Positions 2,876 through 61,437 of a stretch of DNA of 64,000 nucleotides are shown one piece after another; positions within the stretch are counted from its first letter, which is position 1; each line of letters begins with the position of its first letter. A program made the position numbers and the translations under genes. The stretch spans positions 155,465-219,464 of IMG/VR virus record IMGVR_UViG_3300045051_000720; one strand, written 5' to 3'. A model generated the notes under the pieces. That model had not been told where the DNA came from, made no database searches, and was given only the letters and a program-made list of their open reading frames with translations.

Positions 2876-4645
2876 TTGAAGACTCTCATCTACCGCTTCC
2901 GACTTGCTCCTAGCGTGCATCAATGTGCCATGATTGAGGCGAGTAACACACAACTGTGTCGGGTATGGAATGCTTTAGTAGGTGCCACCAAGCACGCCGA
3001 GCACGAATGCAAGCATGGACGCAAGACTTGCGTGGTCAAGCGATTAACTGATTTGCTGACCCAGAAGAAAGTCGTCGGGATGCGCGCGGCTGCCGTGAAA
3101 AAGCTGGCAGAATCCAAAGCAATATCATTAACGGATGCCAACAATCTTCTCACCCGCGAGCAGGTCGCCCGTGAGAGTCGCACGATTGTGCGCAAGAATG
3201 GAACCAAAGCGCGACGGTGTTCTATTCGTAAGCTGGCGTTGGCCTATGCCATTGCTACGGTAGGTCATCAGATCAACCGCTTCGGAGTGGAATCCGCCGC
3301 GTTTTGGGGAGTGATTGAAAAATTCAAAACCTCTACCGCCGACTATCCATTGGGCAAACGGGGTGCGCCCCGATTCAAACGAGTGGGTGATAACGTGTCC
3401 ATGCAGGCTCAGACCAAGAATCAACACGTCAAGGAGGGGGTCGTTGACCTATCGCGTTTAGTCGGTTCTAGTTGTTCCTGTGTCCACATGATTCAACACC
3501 GCCCGATTCCAGACGGCGCGATTGTCAAGCAGATGGCCGTGGTTAAGCAAAATGACCGGCTGTTTGTGGCCATCTTTGTTGATGTGCCAGATGCGGCGGC
3601 GCAAAAGAGTTTAATGGCAGCTAGTGGAGCGACGGCTGGTATTGATCCCGGCCGTAAGACGGCAGTGTCGCTCAGTTCTACAGACGGAACAATCCAACAG
3701 GTTGTCTCGCCCCCACTCTTGCGGGACAAACGGTTCATGCGTCGCACGGCGCGGTTGGCACGCAAGTTGGACAGGCAACGCCGCTTTGCCAATCCAGACC
3801 GCTACAATGAGGATGGCACCTTCAAGCGCGGAGCGCGCGGTGTGTGGGTGACAACCAAGGGAATGACTAAGACCCAAAAGCGTGCGAACGATTTGCGTCG
3901 CCGTCTTGTGGATGTACGCACAGAGCACTATCGTCTCAAAGCGCGCGAAGTGTTGAATCAGTTTGACCACGTTGGGATCGGTACATGGCGGCCCAAGGGT
4001 GCGCCGGGTGAAGGACAAGCCAAACGCGCACAGTTGCGCAAGGACGCAGATAACGCTTTGGGTCAATTCGCGGGTATCCTTCGGGACTATGCTGCGCGCA
4101 ATGTGACCCCCAAGAAGATCTACGATATCAATGAGGTCAACACCACCCGTCGTTGCATCAATTGTGGCGAGATGACGGGGCCGAGTGGGTTGTCCAACCT
4201 TGGGGTGCGCGAGTGGACGTGTTCCCACTGTGGTGCCCACCATCAGAGAGACTTTGCTAGTGCGCGAGCTATCGCTCTGCGCACTCAAATCGTGGCCGAT
4301 ACGCATTTGGTTAACGATGGTCCAACGACCAAAATTCAGCCTGTTCGTTATGCCGCAAAGCGTAACAAACGAAGTGGGTTGGTGGCGACACCAATCAATG
4401 TGCCCGTGGAACAGGAAGCGGAGGCCGCGAGGTCCCGTCTGAGTAAAAACGGTGCTCGTGCGAGTGCCCCAGTGGTAGACCATCCGGCCGATTGCACTCG
4501 CGTGCGAAAAGCCAATGCTGACGAAGGCTCTAGCAATATCCTCGCGTCAGAGCCAGCTACCAATGCCTGCAAAGGTAACCATCGCTCGCATAGTTGCGCC
4601 GTAGAACTTGAGTCCACGGTAGTTGTGGAGGAACACTCACTATGA
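2876..4645 (+). CDS. tnpB: TnpB-family RNA-guided endonuclease (IS200/IS605-type), solo, with rearranged RuvC-II
   Basis: N-terminal YRFRLAPS..LCRVWN, RuvC-I GIDPG, RuvC-II region DHVGIGTW, INEVNTTRRCINC..CSHC zinc finger, RuvC-III HQRDFASARAI; lower GC than flanks; no tnpA in window. Confidence 0.9.
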   Translation: MKTLIYRFRLAPSVHQCAMIEASNTQLCRVWNALVGATKHAEHECKHGRKTCVVKRLTDLLTQKKVVGMRAAAVKKLAESKAISLTDANNLLTREQVARESRTIVRKNGTKARRCSIRKLALAYAIATVGHQINRFGVESAAFWGVIEKFKTSTADYPLGKRGAPRFKRVGDNVSMQAQTKNQHVKEGVVDLSRLVGSSCSCVHMIQHRPIPDGAIVKQMAVVKQNDRLFVAIFVDVPDAAAQKSLMAASGATAGIDPGRKTAVSLSSTDGTIQQVVSPPLLRDKRFMRRTARLARKLDRQRRFANPDRYNEDGTFKRGARGVWVTTKGMTKTQKRANDLRRRLVDVRTEHYRLKAREVLNQFDHVGIGTWRPKGAPGEGQAKRAQLRKDADNALGQFAGILRDYAARNVTPKKIYDINEVNTTRRCINCGEMTGPSGLSNLGVREWTCSHCGAHHQRDFASARAIALRTQIVADTHLVNDGPTTKIQPVRYAAKRNKRSGLVATPINVPVEQEAEAARSRLSKNGARASAPVVDHPADCTRVRKANADEGSSNILASEPATNACKGNHRSHSCAVELESTVVVEEHSL

Positions 4646-16365: not shown

Positions 16366-16411
16366 TTTTCGACATCCAACGACAGGCCTTTTCGACATCC
16401 AACGACAGGCC
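16366..16411 (+). repeat. perfect 23-bp tandem duplication
   Basis: TTTTCGACATCCAACGACAGGCC x2. Confidence 0.9.
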
Positions 16412-16428
16412 TTTCCTACGACTTTCCC

Positions 16429-18134: not shown

Positions 18135-18680
18135 ATGAAGACCATCACCCTTCATCGCCTCAAGACCATCCTTGAGAACCTGACCCACGCCACGCCCGTG
18201 GGTGTCATCGCTTTGACCACCGCGGACTGCCGCGCCAAGGGGCCAACCGGCCCCAACCCATGGGGCAAGGATGGCGTCAAGAAACTGACTCGGCTTAACG
18301 CTATGATCGGCACGGACCACGAGCTGTCCATCCAGCGCCAACAGGCCCGCGAGGGTCAGGAAGCCGATTTCCTCGCTGCGCCGCGCTCATGGGGCGTTCG
18401 GATCGGACCGGGGTTGGTTGAGCATAGGGGGCAGTACTATTTGCCTCTCCAACTCAGTCCCGTCAACGCGGTGCGTCCATTATACTTGGTCCCCCGAGAA
18501 CGCGGGGCCAAGACCATCCTCACCGCCGTACCCAAGGAAATCGTTGCACCGTGGTTATCACCCGCGCGGGATGAGCGTGTCTATCAGGGGGTAGTCCGAC
18601 CGGTAGTTAGGCGCGATCTAAGGCTTGACAGTATCGTTAGCATCACTCTTGGCGGGGAGAAGTATCGCATTAGATCTTGA
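18135..18680 (+). CDS. conserved phage hypothetical protein upstream of the pentamer array
   Basis: leaderless ATG 18135; NPWG..VKKLTRLNAMIG..QRQQAREG..F..PRSWG..LVEHRGQYYL motifs. Confidence 0.75.
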   Translation: MKTITLHRLKTILENLTHATPVGVIALTTADCRAKGPTGPNPWGKDGVKKLTRLNAMIGTDHELSIQRQQAREGQEADFLAAPRSWGVRIGPGLVEHRGQYYLPLQLSPVNAVRPLYLVPRERGAKTILTAVPKEIVAPWLSPARDERVYQGVVRPVVRRDLRLDSIVSITLGGEKYRIRS

Positions 18681-18708
18681 CACTAGGCATCGTTTGGCAA
18701 CACTTAAA
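18677..18708 (+). promoter_or_regulatory. probable promoter of the pentamer array
   Basis: TTGACA at 18677, weak -10 (AACACT ~18699); predicted start near 18709 where the array begins. Confidence 0.5.
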
Positions 18709-19105
18709 GGCGGGGCTTGGCAGGGCTGGGCACGGCGGGGCACGGTTAGGCAAGTGTAAGGCAAGGAACGCGGTTCGGTATGGCAACGCGGGGCGACGCC
18801 GGGTTTGGCCGGGCGTGGCCGGGCGCGGCGAGGTTGGGTTAGGCATGGAACATGGTGTGGTGAGGCTGGGTATGGCGGGGCATGAGTAGGGCGAGGAACA
18901 TGGTAGGGCAAGGCTGGGCGCGGCTGAGCAGGGTCAGGTCCGGTACGGCTAGGCTCGGTTAGGCAAGGTCCGGGGCAGCGCGAGGTGTGGCACGGCTTGG
19001 CTGGGCAACGCACGGCCGGGTCCGGCGAGGCAAGGAACGAGGTGAGGTGGGGCAGGGCAGCGCGCGGCGTGGTCAGGCAGGGCTTGGCAGGGCAACGCAA
19101 GGTCC
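18709..19105 (+). ncRNA. GGY-NN pentamer array, candidate guide-RNA locus (VIPR-like)
   Basis: 64 exact GGYNN units plus 7 CGC/AGC variants in 5-nt register, six segments punctuated by GGC(AA/AT/GA)GGAAC; no credible ORF. Confidence 0.85.
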
Positions 19106-19138
19106 GAGGCGCGACGGTCTATCCGCGCACAATTTCTC

Positions 19139-19167
19139 TTGACAGTAGGCTCTAACATCACTACCTT
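19139..19167 (+). promoter_or_regulatory. promoter of RAMP gene
   Basis: TTGACA(19139)-17-TACCTT(19162). Confidence 0.65.
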
Positions 19168-19245: not shown

Positions 19246-19908
19246 ATGCAAAAGTATAATATCGCACTCGTTGGGGCAAATCCGCTCCTTCTTCATCACG
19301 ACAACATCTCGTGGGCTGGGCTCATGAACGAATGGAATACGGACCCCGCGAACAAAGCCAAGTCCGTCGCGGGCGACGACCGCACTCCCGCTCACCGTTG
19401 GATTGGTTGTCTATACCACGAGGGTGGTCGTCTCATCGTCCCCAGCGATAACCTCATGACTATGCTGCGTGAGGGTGGCGCGCGATGTCCGACTGGAAAG
19501 AAAGGCGCGACGTTCAAACGTCAGACCCAATCCGGGCTGGTTGTCGACCAGAGCGGATGGTCCTTGACTGTTGATGGCAAGGAAATCCCCTATGATCCTA
19601 TTGCCAAGCTTATCGACGAGCCCGACTTCACCAAGCACGAGAAGACGGTAGCGAAGATGGGTTTTGCGCTGTTTGTTAAACGCGCCCGTGTCAACCAGAC
19701 CAAACATGTCCGTGTGCGTCCTCGGTTCGACCGTTGGGAGGCGGCGGGCTCCATTACCGTGTTCGACGATACTATCACTGACCGCGTACTCGAAGACATC
19801 CTCAAGTTTGGAGGTCGTTACGCCGGTCTTGGCGATTGGCGTCCATCATCCCCGAAATCCCCCGGACCATTCGGAACCTTCACGGTGACCGTTTCCCCCG
19901 CATCATGA
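19246..19908 (+). CDS. stand-alone RAMP/Cas7-like protein (Vipr-like candidate effector)
   Basis: N-terminal strand YNIALVGANPLLLH, IVPSDNLMTMLREGG, RVRPRFDRWE strand and C-terminal Gly-rich loop GGRYAGLGDWRP..PGPFGTFTV. Confidence 0.8.
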   Translation: MQKYNIALVGANPLLLHHDNISWAGLMNEWNTDPANKAKSVAGDDRTPAHRWIGCLYHEGGRLIVPSDNLMTMLREGGARCPTGKKGATFKRQTQSGLVVDQSGWSLTVDGKEIPYDPIAKLIDEPDFTKHEKTVAKMGFALFVKRARVNQTKHVRVRPRFDRWEAAGSITVFDDTITDRVLEDILKFGGRYAGLGDWRPSSPKSPGPFGTFTVTVSPAS

Positions 19909-20378
19909 GCGCAACAACCAAACTCTTCGGCGGCGGCGTTCCTACTCAACCCGAGGTTGAAAGCCTGATCAAACGATTTGGTGTTCCTGCGGTAGGGACA
20001 TCGATTCTCTATGTCGATATTGCGGCTACCATTGGACATCCTGTTCGTAGCAATCGCTATCTCGCTGTAGTATCAAGGTGGCGTAAACGTCTGTTCCAGC
20101 AGCATAATCTATTGCTGGACCCTATTCATGGTGAATCCTATACGGTCTGTAACAACAGCCAACGTATTTCCCACAGCACTGGCAAGTACAAAAGCGGCCT
20201 TCGGCATATTCGACGTGCGTCCGAAGTAGCTGCTCGGACCGACACAGAAGGATTGCTTCCCGACGAGATGCGGGCTCGCGACCATATCGTCAAGACCGGT
20301 AATGCTTTGCAGCTAGCGGCGGCCACTGCCGCACGGCAACTCAAATATGTTGCGCCGGGGCTACCTCAGTCAACGTGA
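19905..20378 (+). CDS. RAMP-coupled accessory protein
   Basis: ATGA overlap with RAMP stop; 157 aa, basic, helical. Confidence 0.7.
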   Translation: MSATTKLFGGGVPTQPEVESLIKRFGVPAVGTSILYVDIAATIGHPVRSNRYLAVVSRWRKRLFQQHNLLLDPIHGESYTVCNNSQRISHSTGKYKSGLRHIRRASEVAARTDTEGLLPDEMRARDHIVKTGNALQLAAATAARQLKYVAPGLPQST

Positions 20379-20400
20379 AGATGTCACGTACCGTTTTACC

Positions 20401-20838
20401 ATGACCATCGTTGACACCTCCACCCGCCTCCCCACCACCCCCGGACCCTACGCGGTTCTGGTCAAACCCGCACAGGGCTACCACCGCGCCATTGAGACCG
20501 GCGTGAGCTGGGATGGGTCATGGAAAGGGACCGATGATCCCGTCGTCGCGTGGGTTGACACCGCCGCGCGCGTTGCCGTTGTGCCTTCTCCGACTCAGGC
20601 GGTTGAACCCTCATCCTATTCCCTCACCCTCGTGGGCTTCGATCCTACCAGCAAGATCGGCGTGATCAAGCTCGTGCGCGAGCTGACGGGGCTCGGGTTG
20701 GCTGAATCCAAAGCGACGGTCGAGGCCCTTGCGATCAAACCCCTCATGATCAAGGAGAATGCTTCTCGCGCCGAGGTAACCGCACTGGACACCCGTCTGC
20801 GCGCGGCGGGTGGGGTGACCAAACTGGAGGCCGTATGA
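20401..20838 (+). CDS. ribosomal protein L7/L12 C-terminal-domain fusion protein
   Basis: YSLTLVGFDPTSKIGVIKLVRELTGLGLAESKATVE..P..IKENASRAE..L..AGG matches bL12 CTD; unrelated N-terminal domain. Confidence 0.8.
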   Translation: MTIVDTSTRLPTTPGPYAVLVKPAQGYHRAIETGVSWDGSWKGTDDPVVAWVDTAARVAVVPSPTQAVEPSSYSLTLVGFDPTSKIGVIKLVRELTGLGLAESKATVEALAIKPLMIKENASRAEVTALDTRLRAAGGVTKLEAV

Positions 20839-58948: not shown

Positions 58949-59815
58949 ATGACAGCACACATCAATGTGGACCTCAAGGTCCACGTCAACGGCAACGCAG
59001 TTGCTACCTATACCCACGAGGGTCGCACCTACGTGGAGGCTCGCGAGGGGTCTGAATACGCCCTCTTCATCAAGAACAACAACCCCTTCCGCGTGAAGGT
59101 GGTTCTTAGCGTCGACGGAATCAACGTGGTTGGAGGCGAGGCCGCCACAGGCGAGCGCGAGGAGACGGGCTATATCCTCGATGCCTATCAATCGACCACC
59201 ATCAAGGGCTATCGCGTCGATGACAACACCGTCGCCGCTTTTCGCTTCACCAAAGCGGACGGCGGTTATGCCAAGGCCGAGAAGGGCCTGACGGGCACTA
59301 CAGGCGTGATTGGCTGCCGGGTGTGGCGAGAAAAACCCGCGCCCGCACCCGTCATCAAGGAGATCCATCACCATCATGGTTCGTATGGCCAGCTGTGGCC
59401 CTATCGTCCGCGCTACTATGGCGATCCCATCTGGTACTGGAACGACTCATCTTTTTGCACGCTGACGTGCGGTACCAGCAATGTGGCAGGAGGTGCAGTG
59501 GCTTACAACGCCTGTGCGCAAGCGTCTGTCGACAATGCCGTGCGCATGATGAACTGCTCCATGCAGTCCTCGACGCAGTTGGTCCCAGAGACTAACCCCT
59601 TTGACGCCGGGTCTACGTGGGGCGGGAAAGTCGAGTCTAAGGTTACTGCGGTCGGCTTCGAGGCTGAGACCTTGCTGGACACCCTCACCATCTACTACGC
59701 TTTCAAGGCGGGGTTGATGGCGTTGGGCGTAGACACGAGCCGCGCCCAGAAGGTGGCCTTCCCACAAGCGTTTAGCGGGGCCTACTGCAAGCCACCCGCG
59801 AGTTGGGTAGGCTAA
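58949..59815 (+). CDS. conserved hypothetical protein (288 aa)
   Basis: EGSEYALFIKNN..VVLSVDGINV..GYIL..IKGYR..FRF..GVIG motifs; AGGAG RBS. Confidence 0.75.
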   Translation: MTAHINVDLKVHVNGNAVATYTHEGRTYVEAREGSEYALFIKNNNPFRVKVVLSVDGINVVGGEAATGEREETGYILDAYQSTTIKGYRVDDNTVAAFRFTKADGGYAKAEKGLTGTTGVIGCRVWREKPAPAPVIKEIHHHHGSYGQLWPYRPRYYGDPIWYWNDSSFCTLTCGTSNVAGGAVAYNACAQASVDNAVRMMNCSMQSSTQLVPETNPFDAGSTWGGKVESKVTAVGFEAETLLDTLTIYYAFKAGLMALGVDTSRAQKVAFPQAFSGAYCKPPASWVG

Positions 59816-59928
59816 GCGCCGTACACCTGCCGCGCGCCCGTTTCAGGGCCGAGCCCGCGCCGCGCGCGGCGGTGTATCTCTCATCGGTGGGTCACCACCT
59901 GTTCTTTTCTGCGCCAACCCCTCATCCA

Positions 59929-60705
59929 TTGAGCAACAAACGCCGTCTGGCCAAAGCCAAGTCTCATCCTGCCACCACAATTCAGCTTCCCGTTGATCGC
60001 AGTCCAAAGGTCCATCAACGAGACAAGCTGAGTCAAACGCTAGCCATCCGACAACGCGACGATCTAACCGAACGACAGAAGGTCATCCTAGAGACCGCAC
60101 TACATCGCGACACCCGTGCGCTTTTTATTGACGGTGTGTGGGGCAGCGGTAAGACCTATCTCGCTGTACTCGCGTCCCTTATGTTGCTTAACACCGGGCG
60201 TGTTGACCAAATCGTTTACATTCGCAACCCGATTGAGGCTACCACGACAGGCAAGCTGGGTTATCTCAAAGGCGATCAGGGGGAGAAGATGGCTCCTTAC
60301 TGTGCGCCTCTCTATGACAAGCTAGACGAGATGCTCTGCAAGGGAGACATCGACTCTTTGGTCAAGGATGATCGTGTAGAAACACTACCCCTCGGCTTCA
60401 TCCGTGGACGCAGCTGGAACTGCAAAGCCATTATCGTAGACGAGGCCTCGTCTATGACGTGGGACGATCTGTTACTCATCCTCTCGCGATGCGGTGAGTT
60501 CACTCGCGTCTTCCTAATCGGAGACAGTATTAACCAGAACGACATCGGGTCTAAAGCGGGCTTTCGCCGCATGTTTGCTACTTTCGACGACCCCGACAGC
60601 AAGGAGCATGGGGTGTTTGCATTCGAACTGCGCGAACCGAGCGACATCGTGAGGAGTCGGTTTCTACGCTACGTGATGACCAAGACGGGGGTCATAAAAG
60701 GATAG
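59929..60705 (+). CDS. phoH: PhoH-family ATPase
   Basis: Walker A GVWGSGKT, PLGFIRGRSW..IIVDEAS..LSR.GE..GD..Q.D motifs. Confidence 0.9.
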   Translation: MSNKRRLAKAKSHPATTIQLPVDRSPKVHQRDKLSQTLAIRQRDDLTERQKVILETALHRDTRALFIDGVWGSGKTYLAVLASLMLLNTGRVDQIVYIRNPIEATTTGKLGYLKGDQGEKMAPYCAPLYDKLDEMLCKGDIDSLVKDDRVETLPLGFIRGRSWNCKAIIVDEASSMTWDDLLLILSRCGEFTRVFLIGDSINQNDIGSKAGFRRMFATFDDPDSKEHGVFAFELREPSDIVRSRFLRYVMTKTGVIKG

Positions 60706-60729
60706 CCCATCAAGTGTATAGTCAACGTC

Positions 60730-61437
60730 ATGTCTTACGGACTCATCTATCTCGCCACTAATCAAGATAACGGGCTCAAATATATCGGACAGACTGTGGC
60801 TACCCTCATCACGAGACGCCAAAAACACATTGATTCGGTAAACGCGGGTAGCACGACCTATTTTCACAACGCGATGCGTAGTCATGGGATAAACGCATTT
60901 GCGTTTACTGTGATCGATACCGCCGACTCCCAAGATGAACTAGACCGCAAAGAGCGGTATTGGATACAGTATTATGAGACTCGCGAGCGCACTAAGGGAT
61001 ATAACACCAAAGACGGCGGTAAACTAGGTGCCGTCCTCAACGAAGATATTATCCGCAAAATCAGTCAAGCCAATACAGGTAAAAAACGTTCCCCGGAAGC
61101 ACGAGCGAAAATGTCGGCCCGCAAAAAGGGTATCCCTAATCCCGCGCATTCGGAACGGATGAAACGTCTGTTTCAGGAGAGACCTAGCTGGTGGATAGGC
61201 AAGACGCATACCGAGGACACAAAGAGGCTACTGGCCGATAAACACCGAGGCAAACACCATTCGCCACATACGCAATACCCGTCAGTAACTATACAATGCG
61301 TGGAGACGGGTGTAATTTTCCCGTCCATCTCTGCCGCGGCACGCCATGTAGGTGTCAATCCGTCAGGCTTCGACCGGCTTAAAAAACATCCGAATCAGCG
61401 TGTCAAAGGGTTTCATTGGGTGCGTCTGACAGCTTAA
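60730..61437 (+). CDS. GIY-YIG homing endonuclease with NUMOD3-like repeats
   Basis: GLIYLATN..KYIGQT..R..H..E.YWI..GYN; TGKKRSPEARAKMS and GKTHTEDTKRLL repeats; low GC. Confidence 0.9.
   Translation: MSYGLIYLATNQDNGLKYIGQTVATLITRRQKHIDSVNAGSTTYFHNAMRSHGINAFAFTVIDTADSQDELDRKERYWIQYYETRERTKGYNTKDGGKLGAVLNEDIIRKISQANTGKKRSPEARAKMSARKKGIPNPAHSERMKRLFQERPSWWIGKTHTEDTKRLLADKHRGKHHSPHTQYPSVTIQCVETGVIFPSISAAARHVGVNPSGFDRLKKHPNQRVKGFHWVRLTA

What the first reader, a model, noticed from the sequence alone, without database searches (positions are those of the whole stretch)
19246..19908. Stand-alone RAMP/Cas7-like gene with no other cas genes
Seen: a 220-aa protein with an RRM-like start (YNIALVGANPLLLH) and the terminal Gly-rich loop GLGDWRP..GPFGTF.V typical of RAMPs. 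There is no cas1/2/3/5/6/8/10 and no CRISPR array in 64 kb. Inference: the effector that coats the pentamer RNA. With no nuclease partner evident, it probably binds DNA or RNA to repress transcription of competing elements.
Basis: partly seen in the sequence, partly recalled or inferred. Interest (0 to 1): 0.9.

Follow-up and report, generated by a model that had tools for sequence, protein, structure and literature searches.

The report
Phage VIPR RNA-guided silencing locus
The lone Cas7-like gene is the effector of a VIPR system, a phage-borne RNA-guided DNA-silencing module first described in 2026, and it sits here with its six-guide pentamer RNA array and a small DNA-binding partner gene in a 219-kb phage contig, so it is a genuine new example of a known kind.

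Summary
The 220-aa ORF at 19246-19908 (+) is real. It folds confidently (pLDDT 95.9) as a single-domain RAMP, and its only significant PDB fold matches are CRISPR backbone subunits (Csm3, type VII Cas7, Cas7-11). By sequence it is not a Cas7. It belongs to the Vipr family (family profile vs solved SUSP1 Vipr, E = 1.9e-16, full length) and keeps the published GGY-reading residues: H17, R158, D197, W198, R199. Directly upstream on the same strand (18709-19107) lie all of the window's GGY-NN pentamer runs (9 runs vs 0.4 expected), arranged as six guide blocks. Directly downstream, overlapping by ATGA, is a 157-aa winged-helix-like gene remotely homologous to the gene in the vap1 position of cultured VIPR phages. 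All 83 related loci have a same-strand array next to vipr, and 74 have the partner gene. Loci with 99-100% identical Vipr often share no guides. There is no CRISPR array and no cas1-10. The distinctive feature is a compact array punctuated by a 7-nt GGAAC-R-N delimiter instead of long structured tails. No natural target was found. Verdict: new member of a known kind.

The parts
18675..18705 (+). Putative promoter of the vrRNA array: TCTTGACA, then 17 nt, then ACACTT, ending 3 nt before the first pentamer
   Evidence: The octamer TCTTGACA occurs 9 times in the window against 1.3 expected, with no shuffle reaching 9. The -10 is weak and the consensus scan did not call it. This is an inference.
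18709..19107 (+). vrRNA array: about 67 GGY-NN pentamer units in six guide blocks
   Evidence: All 9 runs of at least 4 GGYNN units in the 64-kb window lie here on the + strand; 0.4 are expected. N4 and N5 entropy is 1.94 and 1.95 bits. ORFs called across this region (e.g. 18618-19100 minus strand) are artefacts of the repeat.
18709..18753 (+). Guide block a (9 units), followed by punctuation 18754-18771 (GTGTAA, GGCAA, delimiter GGAACGC at 18765-18771)
18772..18846 (+). Guide block b (15 units, 2 degenerate), followed by delimiter GGAACAT at 18847-18853
18854..18883 (+). Guide block c (6 units), followed by punctuation 18884-18901 (GAGTAG, GGCGA, delimiter GGAACAT at 18895-18901)
18902..18966 (+). 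Guide block d (13 units, 1 degenerate), followed by delimiter GGTCCGG at 18967-18973
   Evidence: the delimiter was re-read using the grammar seen in relatives.
18974..19033 (+). Guide block e (12 units, 2 degenerate), followed by delimiter GGAACGA at 19034-19040
19041..19100 (+). Guide block f (12 units, 2 degenerate), followed by the terminal delimiter GGTCCGA at 19101-19107
19109..19140 (+). Terminal GC hairpin (GCGCG 19109-19113 pairs with CGCGC 19124-19128) followed by the conserved ACAATTTC U-rich stretch; possible array terminator or 3' cap
   Evidence: RNAalifold on 4 relatives predicts 5 pairs, 2 of them with compensatory changes. The single-sequence fold is not better than shuffles (z = 0.14). 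Tentative.
19137..19167 (+). Putative promoter of vipr-vap: TCTTGACA, then 17 nt, then TACCTT
   Evidence: Inference.
19246..19908 (+). vipr: 220-aa minimal RAMP, the effector that polymerises on the vrRNA
   Evidence: phmmer vs PDB 36pp 'SUSP1 Vipr protein' E = 2.8e-5; family profile E = 1.9e-16 over the full length. hhalign vs the Felixounavirus homolog 99.3%, E = 3.3e-20. PHROG 4652 E = 3e-16. Fold. Contact residues.
19905..20378 (+). vap-like accessory gene: 157 aa, start overlaps the vipr stop (ATGA), winged-helix-like N-terminus plus a long helical hairpin
   Evidence: A homolog is present in 74 of 83 related loci, usually directly downstream. AF2 pLDDT 90.8. Foldseek hits are weak (best E = 0.02) and almost all are winged-helix DNA binders. 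hhalign to the gene in the vap1 position of phage wV8 gives 93.9%, E = 1.6e-7, and of LESphi2 88%, E = 3e-6. No Pfam or PHROG family.

Best explanation
This is a complete VIPR (Viral Interference Programmable Repeat) module carried by a roughly 219-kb phage. A promoter-like element upstream of 18709 most likely drives a roughly 400-nt precursor holding six guides, each 6-15 GGY-NN pentamers long. One Vipr protomer binds each pentamer. Residues H17, R158, D197, W198 and R199 hold the GGY bases flipped out, so the variable NN dinucleotides are presented as a non-contiguous guide. The filament then binds double-stranded DNA that matches NN-x-NN-x (the 1-nt skip rule) and blocks transcription of a competing phage, prophage or satellite. 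The small winged-helix-like Vap partner assists. The guides are separated by a 7-nt GGAAC-R-N delimiter rather than by long structured tails. Shown here: the homology, the fold, the conserved contact residues, the array and its grammar, the conserved three-part synteny, guide turnover, and the phage context. Inferred from the characterised SUSP1 and P. fulva systems: transcription, RNP assembly, DNA binding, silencing, and the role of Vap.
For: Vipr homology: with 122 cultured-phage homologs at 97-99% coverage. RAMP fold. GGY-contact residues defined by cryo-EM and mutagenesis (paper .720927) are identical in the window and conserved in 62-69 of 69 homologs. Array: unique to this spot and strand, with NN at near-maximal entropy. 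Synteny: 83 of 83 related loci have same-strand arrays next to vipr and 74 of 83 have the partner gene, while the other flanking genes are not conserved. Guide turnover occurs under 99-100% identical Vipr. The partner is related to the gene in the vap1 position. Phage context: an IMG/VR contig with lysozyme, PhoH, homing endonucleases and a tail spike. No CRISPR array or cas genes. No self-target, as published for other VIPRs.
Against: Identity to the only experimentally characterised clade is just 23-29%. The residue aligned to the functionally required SUSP1 K33 is T32 here; it is K in 32 of 69 homologs. The array lacks the 60-120-nt structured tail seen in type II guides. Block c has only 6 units, below the published range of 9-16. 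No natural target was found for any guide. The promoter elements have weak -10 hexamers. There are no expression data.
Confidence: 0.88

Rival explanations
1. A relic or orphan CRISPR Cas7/Csm3 gene captured by a phage, with no guide of its own. It would act as a decoy or anti-CRISPR by soaking up host crRNAs, and the neighbouring pentamer tract would be unrelated.
For: The best PDB fold matches are Csm3, type VII Cas7 and Cas7-11. One BFVD hit is named 'Cas system-associated RAMP'.
Against: No Cas7 sequence model matches: Pfam none, PADLOC none, and the PDB profile search finds only Vipr. The pentamer array co-occurs with the gene on the same strand in 83 of 83 loci. The residues that read GGY are conserved.
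Confidence: 0.03
2. The GGY-NN tract acts at the DNA level, for example as iterons, a protein-binding or G-rich structural element, or a spurious Gly/Ala/Arg-rich ORF. It would not be a guide RNA, and the RAMP would bind it as a regulator.
For: ORFs can be read through the tract; public gene callers do call a 117-aa gene in L001 and there is a 160-aa minus-strand ORF here. No expression data exist for this locus.
Against: A 5-nt period cannot keep a reading frame. Strand polarity relative to vipr is absolute, with nearly no minus-strand runs in 83 loci. NN positions are maximally variable and turn over between identical proteins, which suits a guide and not a binding site. Homologous arrays are transcribed and co-purify with Vipr in SUSP1 and P. 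fulva (paper).
Confidence: 0.04
3. A VIPR that destroys its target or targets RNA, like the nuclease-linked, host-domesticated types III and V, rather than silencing DNA transcription.
For: The paper reports nuclease- and helicase-associated types. DNA versus RNA targeting was not tested for this clade. The closest fold matches are RNA-targeting type III subunits.
Against: The only conserved partner is a small winged-helix-like protein with no nuclease motif or match, and it is related to the type II gene in the vap1 position. The locus sits in a phage, not in a defence island.
Confidence: 0.05

Closest known systems
Type II VIPR systems of Escherichia phage SUSP1 (Felixounavirus) and the Pseudomonas fulva prophage (bioRxiv 10.64898/2026.04.26.720920 and .720927; PDB 36pp)
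   Same: A single minimal RAMP effector with identical GGY-contact residues (H17; R138 = R158; D177/W178/R179 = D197/W198/R199). Canonical GGY/NN pentamer guides on the same strand. A small downstream partner gene that is remotely homologous. Phage-encoded, with no CRISPR array or cas genes.
   Different: Only 23-29% identity. The protein is 220 aa against 195-202 aa, with an insertion around residues 100-135. Guides are packed back to back with a 7-nt GGAAC-R-N delimiter instead of each carrying a 60-120-nt structured tail. All guides lie upstream in one array. The host is an uncultured 219-kb phage with about 60% GC.
'Staggered' vrRNA arrays mentioned for non-type-II VIPRs (fig. S18 of the discovery preprint)
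   Same: Guides abut so that the end of one marks the start of the next, which matches the compact layout here.
   Different: The figure and tables are not held, so identity with that class could not be verified. The paper states that only the ribozyme-interspersed and single-guide architectures were confirmed by sRNA-seq.
CRISPR class 1 backbone RAMPs (Csm3/Cmr4, type I and type VII Cas7, Cas7-11)
   Same: RRM core, glycine-rich loop and thumb. One protomer per repeat of the guide with periodic base flipping. Best solved-structure fold matches.
   Different: No detectable sequence-family membership. The guide period is 5 nt (3 bases sequestered, 2 read) rather than 6 nt. There is no CRISPR array, Cas6 or Cas5 handle, large or small subunit, adaptation genes or nuclease.

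Membership tests
VIPR system | Effector homologous to characterised Vipr proteins | tested here: met
   phmmer vs PDB 36pp SUSP1 Vipr E = 2.8e-5. Family profile E = 1.9e-16, residues 2-215 vs 2-188. hhalign vs wV8 gp096 99.3%, E = 3.3e-20.
VIPR system | Minimal single-domain RAMP fold (RRM core, G-loop, thumb; no second RRM) | tested here: met
   AF2 pLDDT 95.9; one beta-alpha-beta core with a beta-hairpin at 141-161 and the G-loop at 194-212. Foldseek hits at E <= 1e-3 are all Cas7-type RAMPs.
VIPR system | Residues that read G1, G2 and Y3 of the repeat (SUSP1 H17, R138, D177, W178, R179) | tested here: met
   They align to H17, R158, D197, W198 and R199 and are conserved in 62, 69, 63, 63 and 66 of 69 homologs. 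The K33 equivalent is T32 here, so that one is not conserved.
VIPR system | Adjacent same-strand tandem YNNGG (GGY/NN) repeats, at least 4 units, with variable NN | tested here: met
   Nine runs totalling 56 perfect units at 18709-19095, found only there; 0.4 expected. NN entropy 1.94 and 1.95 bits. Same arrangement in 83 of 83 relatives.
VIPR system | Each vrRNA has 9-16 repeats followed by an invariant structured 3' tail | tested here: inconclusive
   Blocks have 9, 15, 6, 13, 12 and 12 units. There is no long tail. Instead there is a conserved 7-nt GGAAC-R-N delimiter (97 gaps of exactly 7 nt across the family) and one terminal hairpin with weak covariation support.
VIPR system | Accessory vap gene next to vipr | tested here: met
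   A 157-aa gene overlaps the vipr stop and is conserved in 74 of 83 loci. hhalign to the gene in the vap1 position: 93.9%, E = 1.6e-7. That wV8 gp095 is vap1 is inferred from its position.
VIPR system | Not associated with a CRISPR array or cas operon; mostly viral or proviral | tested here: met
   (no array, no cas1-10). (IMG/VR contig of 219,464 bp). (phage genes). Relatives sit next to integrase, RecT, terminase and portal genes.
VIPR system | vrRNAs are expressed and co-purify with Vipr | not testable with these tools
   Requires sRNA-seq and pull-down.
VIPR system | Guides match natural dsDNA targets by the 1-nt skip rule (at least 80% of NN positions) | tested here: inconclusive
   Nothing exceeded shuffled-guide controls in the window or in 83 loci. 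Exact scans gave 0 hits for guide d in all three collections and for the guide b core in the viral collection. The guide b core gave 8 hits in cellular genes and guide f gave 3 hits, both at about chance level.
VIPR system | Assignment to one of types I-VII (Vipr phylogeny, array architecture, vap class) | not testable with these tools
   The reference tree and tables are not held. A vap1-like partner suggests affinity with type II, whereas the array architecture differs from the type II loci examined.
CRISPR-Cas Cas7/Csm3 | Match to Cas7-family sequence models | tested here: not met
   Pfam: 0 families at E <= 10. PADLOC: no Cas7 hit. The PDB profile search finds no Cas7 or Csm3 at E <= 1.
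CRISPR-Cas Cas7/Csm3 | Encoded with a CRISPR array and other cas genes | tested here: not met
CRISPR-Cas Cas7/Csm3 | RAMP fold | tested here: met
   (E down to 3.6e-5, TM 0.35-0.50).

The most novel reading that the evidence does not exclude
This clade may define guide boundaries without a structured tail. The 7-nt GGAAC-R-N delimiter puts a purine at repeat position 3, which the Y3 pocket sterically excludes in SUSP1 Vipr, and it shifts the register by 2 nt. It could therefore act as a stop or ruler for Vipr polymerisation and expose a cleavage site. One short transcript would then yield six tail-less guides. That would be a new and very compact rule for multiplexed guide biogenesis, which the discovery paper mentions only as 'staggered arrays' and did not test.
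Probability: 0.35. Interest if true: 0.55.

Novelty: new member of a known kind. Interest (0 to 1): 0.35.

Why it matters
VIPR is a very recently described RNA-guided system, proposed as the ancestor of CRISPR RAMPs and as a programmable DNA silencer without a PAM. This locus adds a well-resolved member from a large, uncultured, high-GC phage. It belongs to a big environmental clade: 1,629 homologs in the word-index search and 914 representatives at 50% identity, all annotated only as hypothetical. The clade shows a simple, countable array grammar (6-15 pentamers plus a 7-nt delimiter) and fast guide turnover under an unchanged effector. That grammar could help annotation, because public gene callers currently mis-call these arrays as ORFs. 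It could also help design compact multiplexed guide arrays. It does not change how the system is thought to work.

Tried and rejected
1. Pfam on Vipr, Vap and eight neighbours gave nothing for Vipr or Vap. PHROGs gave only phrog_4652 'unknown function' for Vipr.
2. Rfam found no family in the array region or the whole window, so there is no hammerhead-interspersed architecture.
3. The search for related loci with the diverse alignment A1 failed for lack of a conserved stretch. The single-protein query returned only the source contig. The closer alignment A2 worked.
4. Target search. The local mismatch-tolerant scan of the window plus 83 loci, which also tests self-targeting and targeting of relatives' vipr genes, found nothing above shuffled guides. 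Exact 1-nt-skip scans of guide d (22 specified bases) returned 0 hits in the viral, metagenome and genome collections. The guide b core returned 0 viral hits and 8 metagenome hits. Those 8 lie in a PotA-like ABC ATPase, a Gfo/Idh/MocA oxidoreductase, a glycosidase and an unknown gene, in mixed codon phases and with unmatched flanks, so I rejected them as chance. Guide f returned 3 genome hits: one in a Terriglobia MAG and two identical ones in a Ca. Udaeobacter MAG (23 of 26 NN bases). About one hit is expected by chance, there is no phage context, and I did not accept them.
5. The Vap profile vs PDB sequences gave nothing meaningful. Foldseek gave no hit at E <= 1e-3.
6. Terminal hairpin: the eight-sequence alignment collapsed, the four-sequence subset gives weak support, and the single-sequence fold is not significant.
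7. The consensus sigma-70 scan did not call the TCTTGACA-based elements as promoters.
8. Type (I-VII) assignment was not possible because the paper's supplementary tables are not held.

Full report
OBSERVATION. An AlphaFold2 model built on 69 diverse homologs is very confident (mean pLDDT 95.9, pTM 0.90). It starts with a beta strand (residues 2-10, the 'YNIALVGANP' segment) and ends with the glycine-rich loop (G194-L-G-D-W-R-P200 ... G207-P-F-G-T-F212). Foldseek against the PDB returns 36 hits at E <= 1e-3. Every one is a CRISPR backbone RAMP (Csm3 of type III-A, type VII Cas7), with Cas7-11 just below the cut-off, at TM 0.35-0.50. BFVD returns viral RAMP-like proteins at TM 0.55-0.67. The window contains no CRISPR array (TRF; Rfam). 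PADLOC and Pfam scans of 59 plus-strand ORFs find no cas1-10 gene; the only cas-like protein is a TnpB/Cas12f-like ORF at 2876-4645.

WHAT IT IS. No Pfam family matches. The PDB sequence search, however, hits chain 36pp_D, 'SUSP1 Vipr protein' (E = 2.8e-5). A profile of the family hits it over its full length (E = 1.9e-16) and finds no Cas7 or Csm3 chain even at E <= 1. hhalign against the homolog in Felixounavirus wV8 gives 99.3% probability, E = 3.3e-20. tblastn finds full-length homologs at 23-29% identity in 122 cultured phages, mostly Felixounavirus, and also in Pseudomonas LESphi2, Mycobacterium LittleE and Gordonia Trine.

Vipr is the effector of VIPR (Viral Interference Programmable Repeat) systems, described in 2026 preprints. 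A minimal RAMP polymerises on a vrRNA made of GGY/NN pentamers. It sequesters each GGY and presents the NN dinucleotides, which pair with double-stranded DNA following an NN-x 1-nt-skip rule. Binding silences transcription of competing phages, prophages and satellites. A small vap gene usually accompanies vipr.

The cryo-EM paper names the GGY-contact residues of SUSP1 Vipr as H17, R138, D177, W178 and R179; alanine substitutions of D177 or R138 abolish silencing. In the HMMER alignments these correspond to H17, R158, D197, W198 and R199 of the window protein. They are conserved in 62, 69, 63, 63 and 66 of 69 diverse homologs. The residue aligned to SUSP1 K33 is T32 here (K in 32 of 69).

THE GUIDE ARRAY. 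Immediately upstream on the same strand, 18709-19107 is built of GGY-NN pentamers. All nine runs of at least four perfect units in the 64-kb window lie there and none lies on the minus strand; shuffles give 0.4. Positions 4 and 5 carry 1.94 and 1.95 bits of entropy, and 15 of the 16 dinucleotides are used.

Register parsing resolves six blocks (a-f: 9, 15, 6, 13, 12 and 12 units). The blocks are separated by a 7-nt element: GGAACGC, GGAACAT, GGAACAT, GGTCCGG, GGAACGA and a terminal GGTCCGA. Two junctions carry an extra 6-nt insert plus one more unit. Across 78 non-redundant related loci, the gap between successive blocks peaks sharply at exactly 7 nt (97 cases), with consensus G-G-A-A-C-R-N. 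GGAAC follows 25% of blocks against a background of about 1.6%.

After the last delimiter comes a GC hairpin (19109-19128) and a conserved ACAATTTC stretch. Four relatives support five base pairs, two with compensatory changes. The single-sequence fold is not better than shuffles, so this feature is tentative.

The octamer TCTTGACA is over-represented in the window (9 vs 1.3 expected). It occurs 33 nt upstream of the array and again between the array and vipr, each time with a weak -10 hexamer 17 nt downstream. These are plausible promoters, but the consensus scan does not call them.

THE PARTNER. The vipr stop overlaps the start (ATGA) of a 157-aa ORF (19905-20378). A homolog is present in 74 of 83 related loci, usually directly downstream, whereas none of the other flanking genes is conserved. 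It has no Pfam or PHROG match. Its model (pLDDT 90.8) shows a helix-strand-helix-helix-beta-hairpin unit followed by two long helices. Foldseek gives no significant hit, but the weak hits are nearly all winged-helix DNA binders. A profile of the family aligns to the gene in the vap1 position of Felixounavirus wV8 (93.9%, E = 1.6e-7) and of Pseudomonas phage LESphi2 (88%, E = 3e-6). It is therefore best read as a vap1-like predicted DNA-binding accessory, not a nuclease.

COMPARATIVE SUPPORT. The family is large: 1,629 homologs in the word-index search and 914 representatives at 50% identity, all unnamed. Every one of 83 fetched loci has a same-strand GGYNN array next to vipr, either upstream, downstream or on both sides. 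Contexts are phage or prophage, with integrase, RecT, VRR-NUC, terminase and portal genes. Loci whose Vipr proteins are 99-100% identical frequently share no guide, for example L042/L045 and L047/L049/L050. This is the turnover expected of a programmable guide set.

The window itself comes from IMG/VR contig UViG_3300045051_000720 (219,464 bp). It carries a lysozyme, PhoH, GIY-YIG and HNH homing endonucleases and a tail spike.

HOW IT DIFFERS FROM THE CHARACTERISED SYSTEMS. In wV8 and LESphi2, each 8-11-unit guide is followed by 60-120 nt of tail or spacer. Here six guides are packed into about 400 nt with only the 7-nt delimiter between them. [quoted passage not shown] It states that only the ribozyme-interspersed and single-guide architectures were verified by sRNA-seq. 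I could not check whether this clade is the one shown there because the figures and tables are not held. The delimiter carries a purine at repeat position 3, which the SUSP1 Y3 pocket is said to exclude. A role as a stop or ruler for filament growth and as a processing site is my inference.

TARGETS. Applying the 1-nt-skip rule, no guide matches the window (no self-targeting, as published) or any of the 83 related loci, including their vipr genes, better than shuffled guides do. Exact-pattern scans of the public collections found nothing for guide d and nothing for the guide b core in the viral collection. The metagenome hits for guide b and the genome hits for guide f were at chance level and lay in ordinary cellular genes. 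The target of this system is unknown. The collection tools cannot do the mismatch-tolerant search used in the paper.

VERDICT. Its interpretation, a RAMP coating a pentamer RNA to silence competitors, coincides with the published VIPR mechanism. The locus meets every sequence-testable membership criterion except the structured tail, which is replaced by a short delimiter. It is a new member of a known and very recent kind. The compact delimiter grammar is the one feature that merits experimental follow-up.

Noticed in passing
window 2876-4645 (+): A 589-aa TnpB/Cas12f-like protein (Pfam Cas12f1-like TNB domain; PHROG transposase; PADLOC Cas12u2/Cas12f, E down to 9e-26). This is a second, unrelated RNA-guided-nuclease-type gene in the same phage, about 15 kb from the VIPR locus. 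I did not look for an omega RNA or IS ends.
   Followed up: partly
window 20347-20838 (+): A 163-aa protein whose C-terminal 67 residues match the ribosomal protein L7/L12 C-terminal domain (Pfam E = 5e-14). It overlaps the end of vap. It is not conserved next to VIPR in any of 82 other loci, so it is probably unrelated cargo, but it is an unusual phage gene.
   Followed up: partly
window 11050, 18675, 19137, 24478, 36662 (+); 43214, 53276, 58793, 58844 (-): The octamer TCTTGACA occurs 9 times against 1.3 expected. At least three copies have a -10-like hexamer 17 nt downstream. It is possibly this phage's early-promoter motif.
   Followed up: partly
L001 5629-5982; L002 375-728; window 18618-19100 (-): Public gene calls and mechanical ORF lists read straight through vrRNA arrays, for example a 117-aa 'gene' in the JGI contigs. 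VIPR arrays are thus being mis-annotated as proteins.
   Followed up: yes
window 18754-18759 and 18884-18889; L001 5769-5774: A second, rarer punctuation: a 6-nt insert (GTGTAA, GAGTAG, GAGCAA) followed by one more pentamer and then the GGAAC delimiter. Its meaning is unknown.
   Followed up: no
L093 6167-6198 (-) and L094 4567-4598 (+) (Candidatus Udaeobacter MAG DASXNN01): Guide f matches an identical sequence on two contigs of one Verrucomicrobiota MAG at 23 of 26 NN positions. The number of hits equals the chance expectation and there is no evident phage context, so I did not accept it as a target. A relative of the Vipr does lie in an Opitutaceae (Verrucomicrobiota) prophage (L003).
   Followed up: partly
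window 16366-16414: A perfect 2.1-copy tandem repeat of a 23-nt unit (TRF score 98) in an intergenic or small-ORF region. Unexplained.
   Followed up: no
window 59803-61437 and elsewhere: PhoH-like ATPase (59803-60705), GIY-YIG/NUMOD3 homing endonuclease (60730-61437), two HNH_3 endonucleases, an Hsp20 and an AP2-domain protein, as is typical of large-phage accessory regions. Most of the 59 scanned ORFs have no family match.
   Followed up: no
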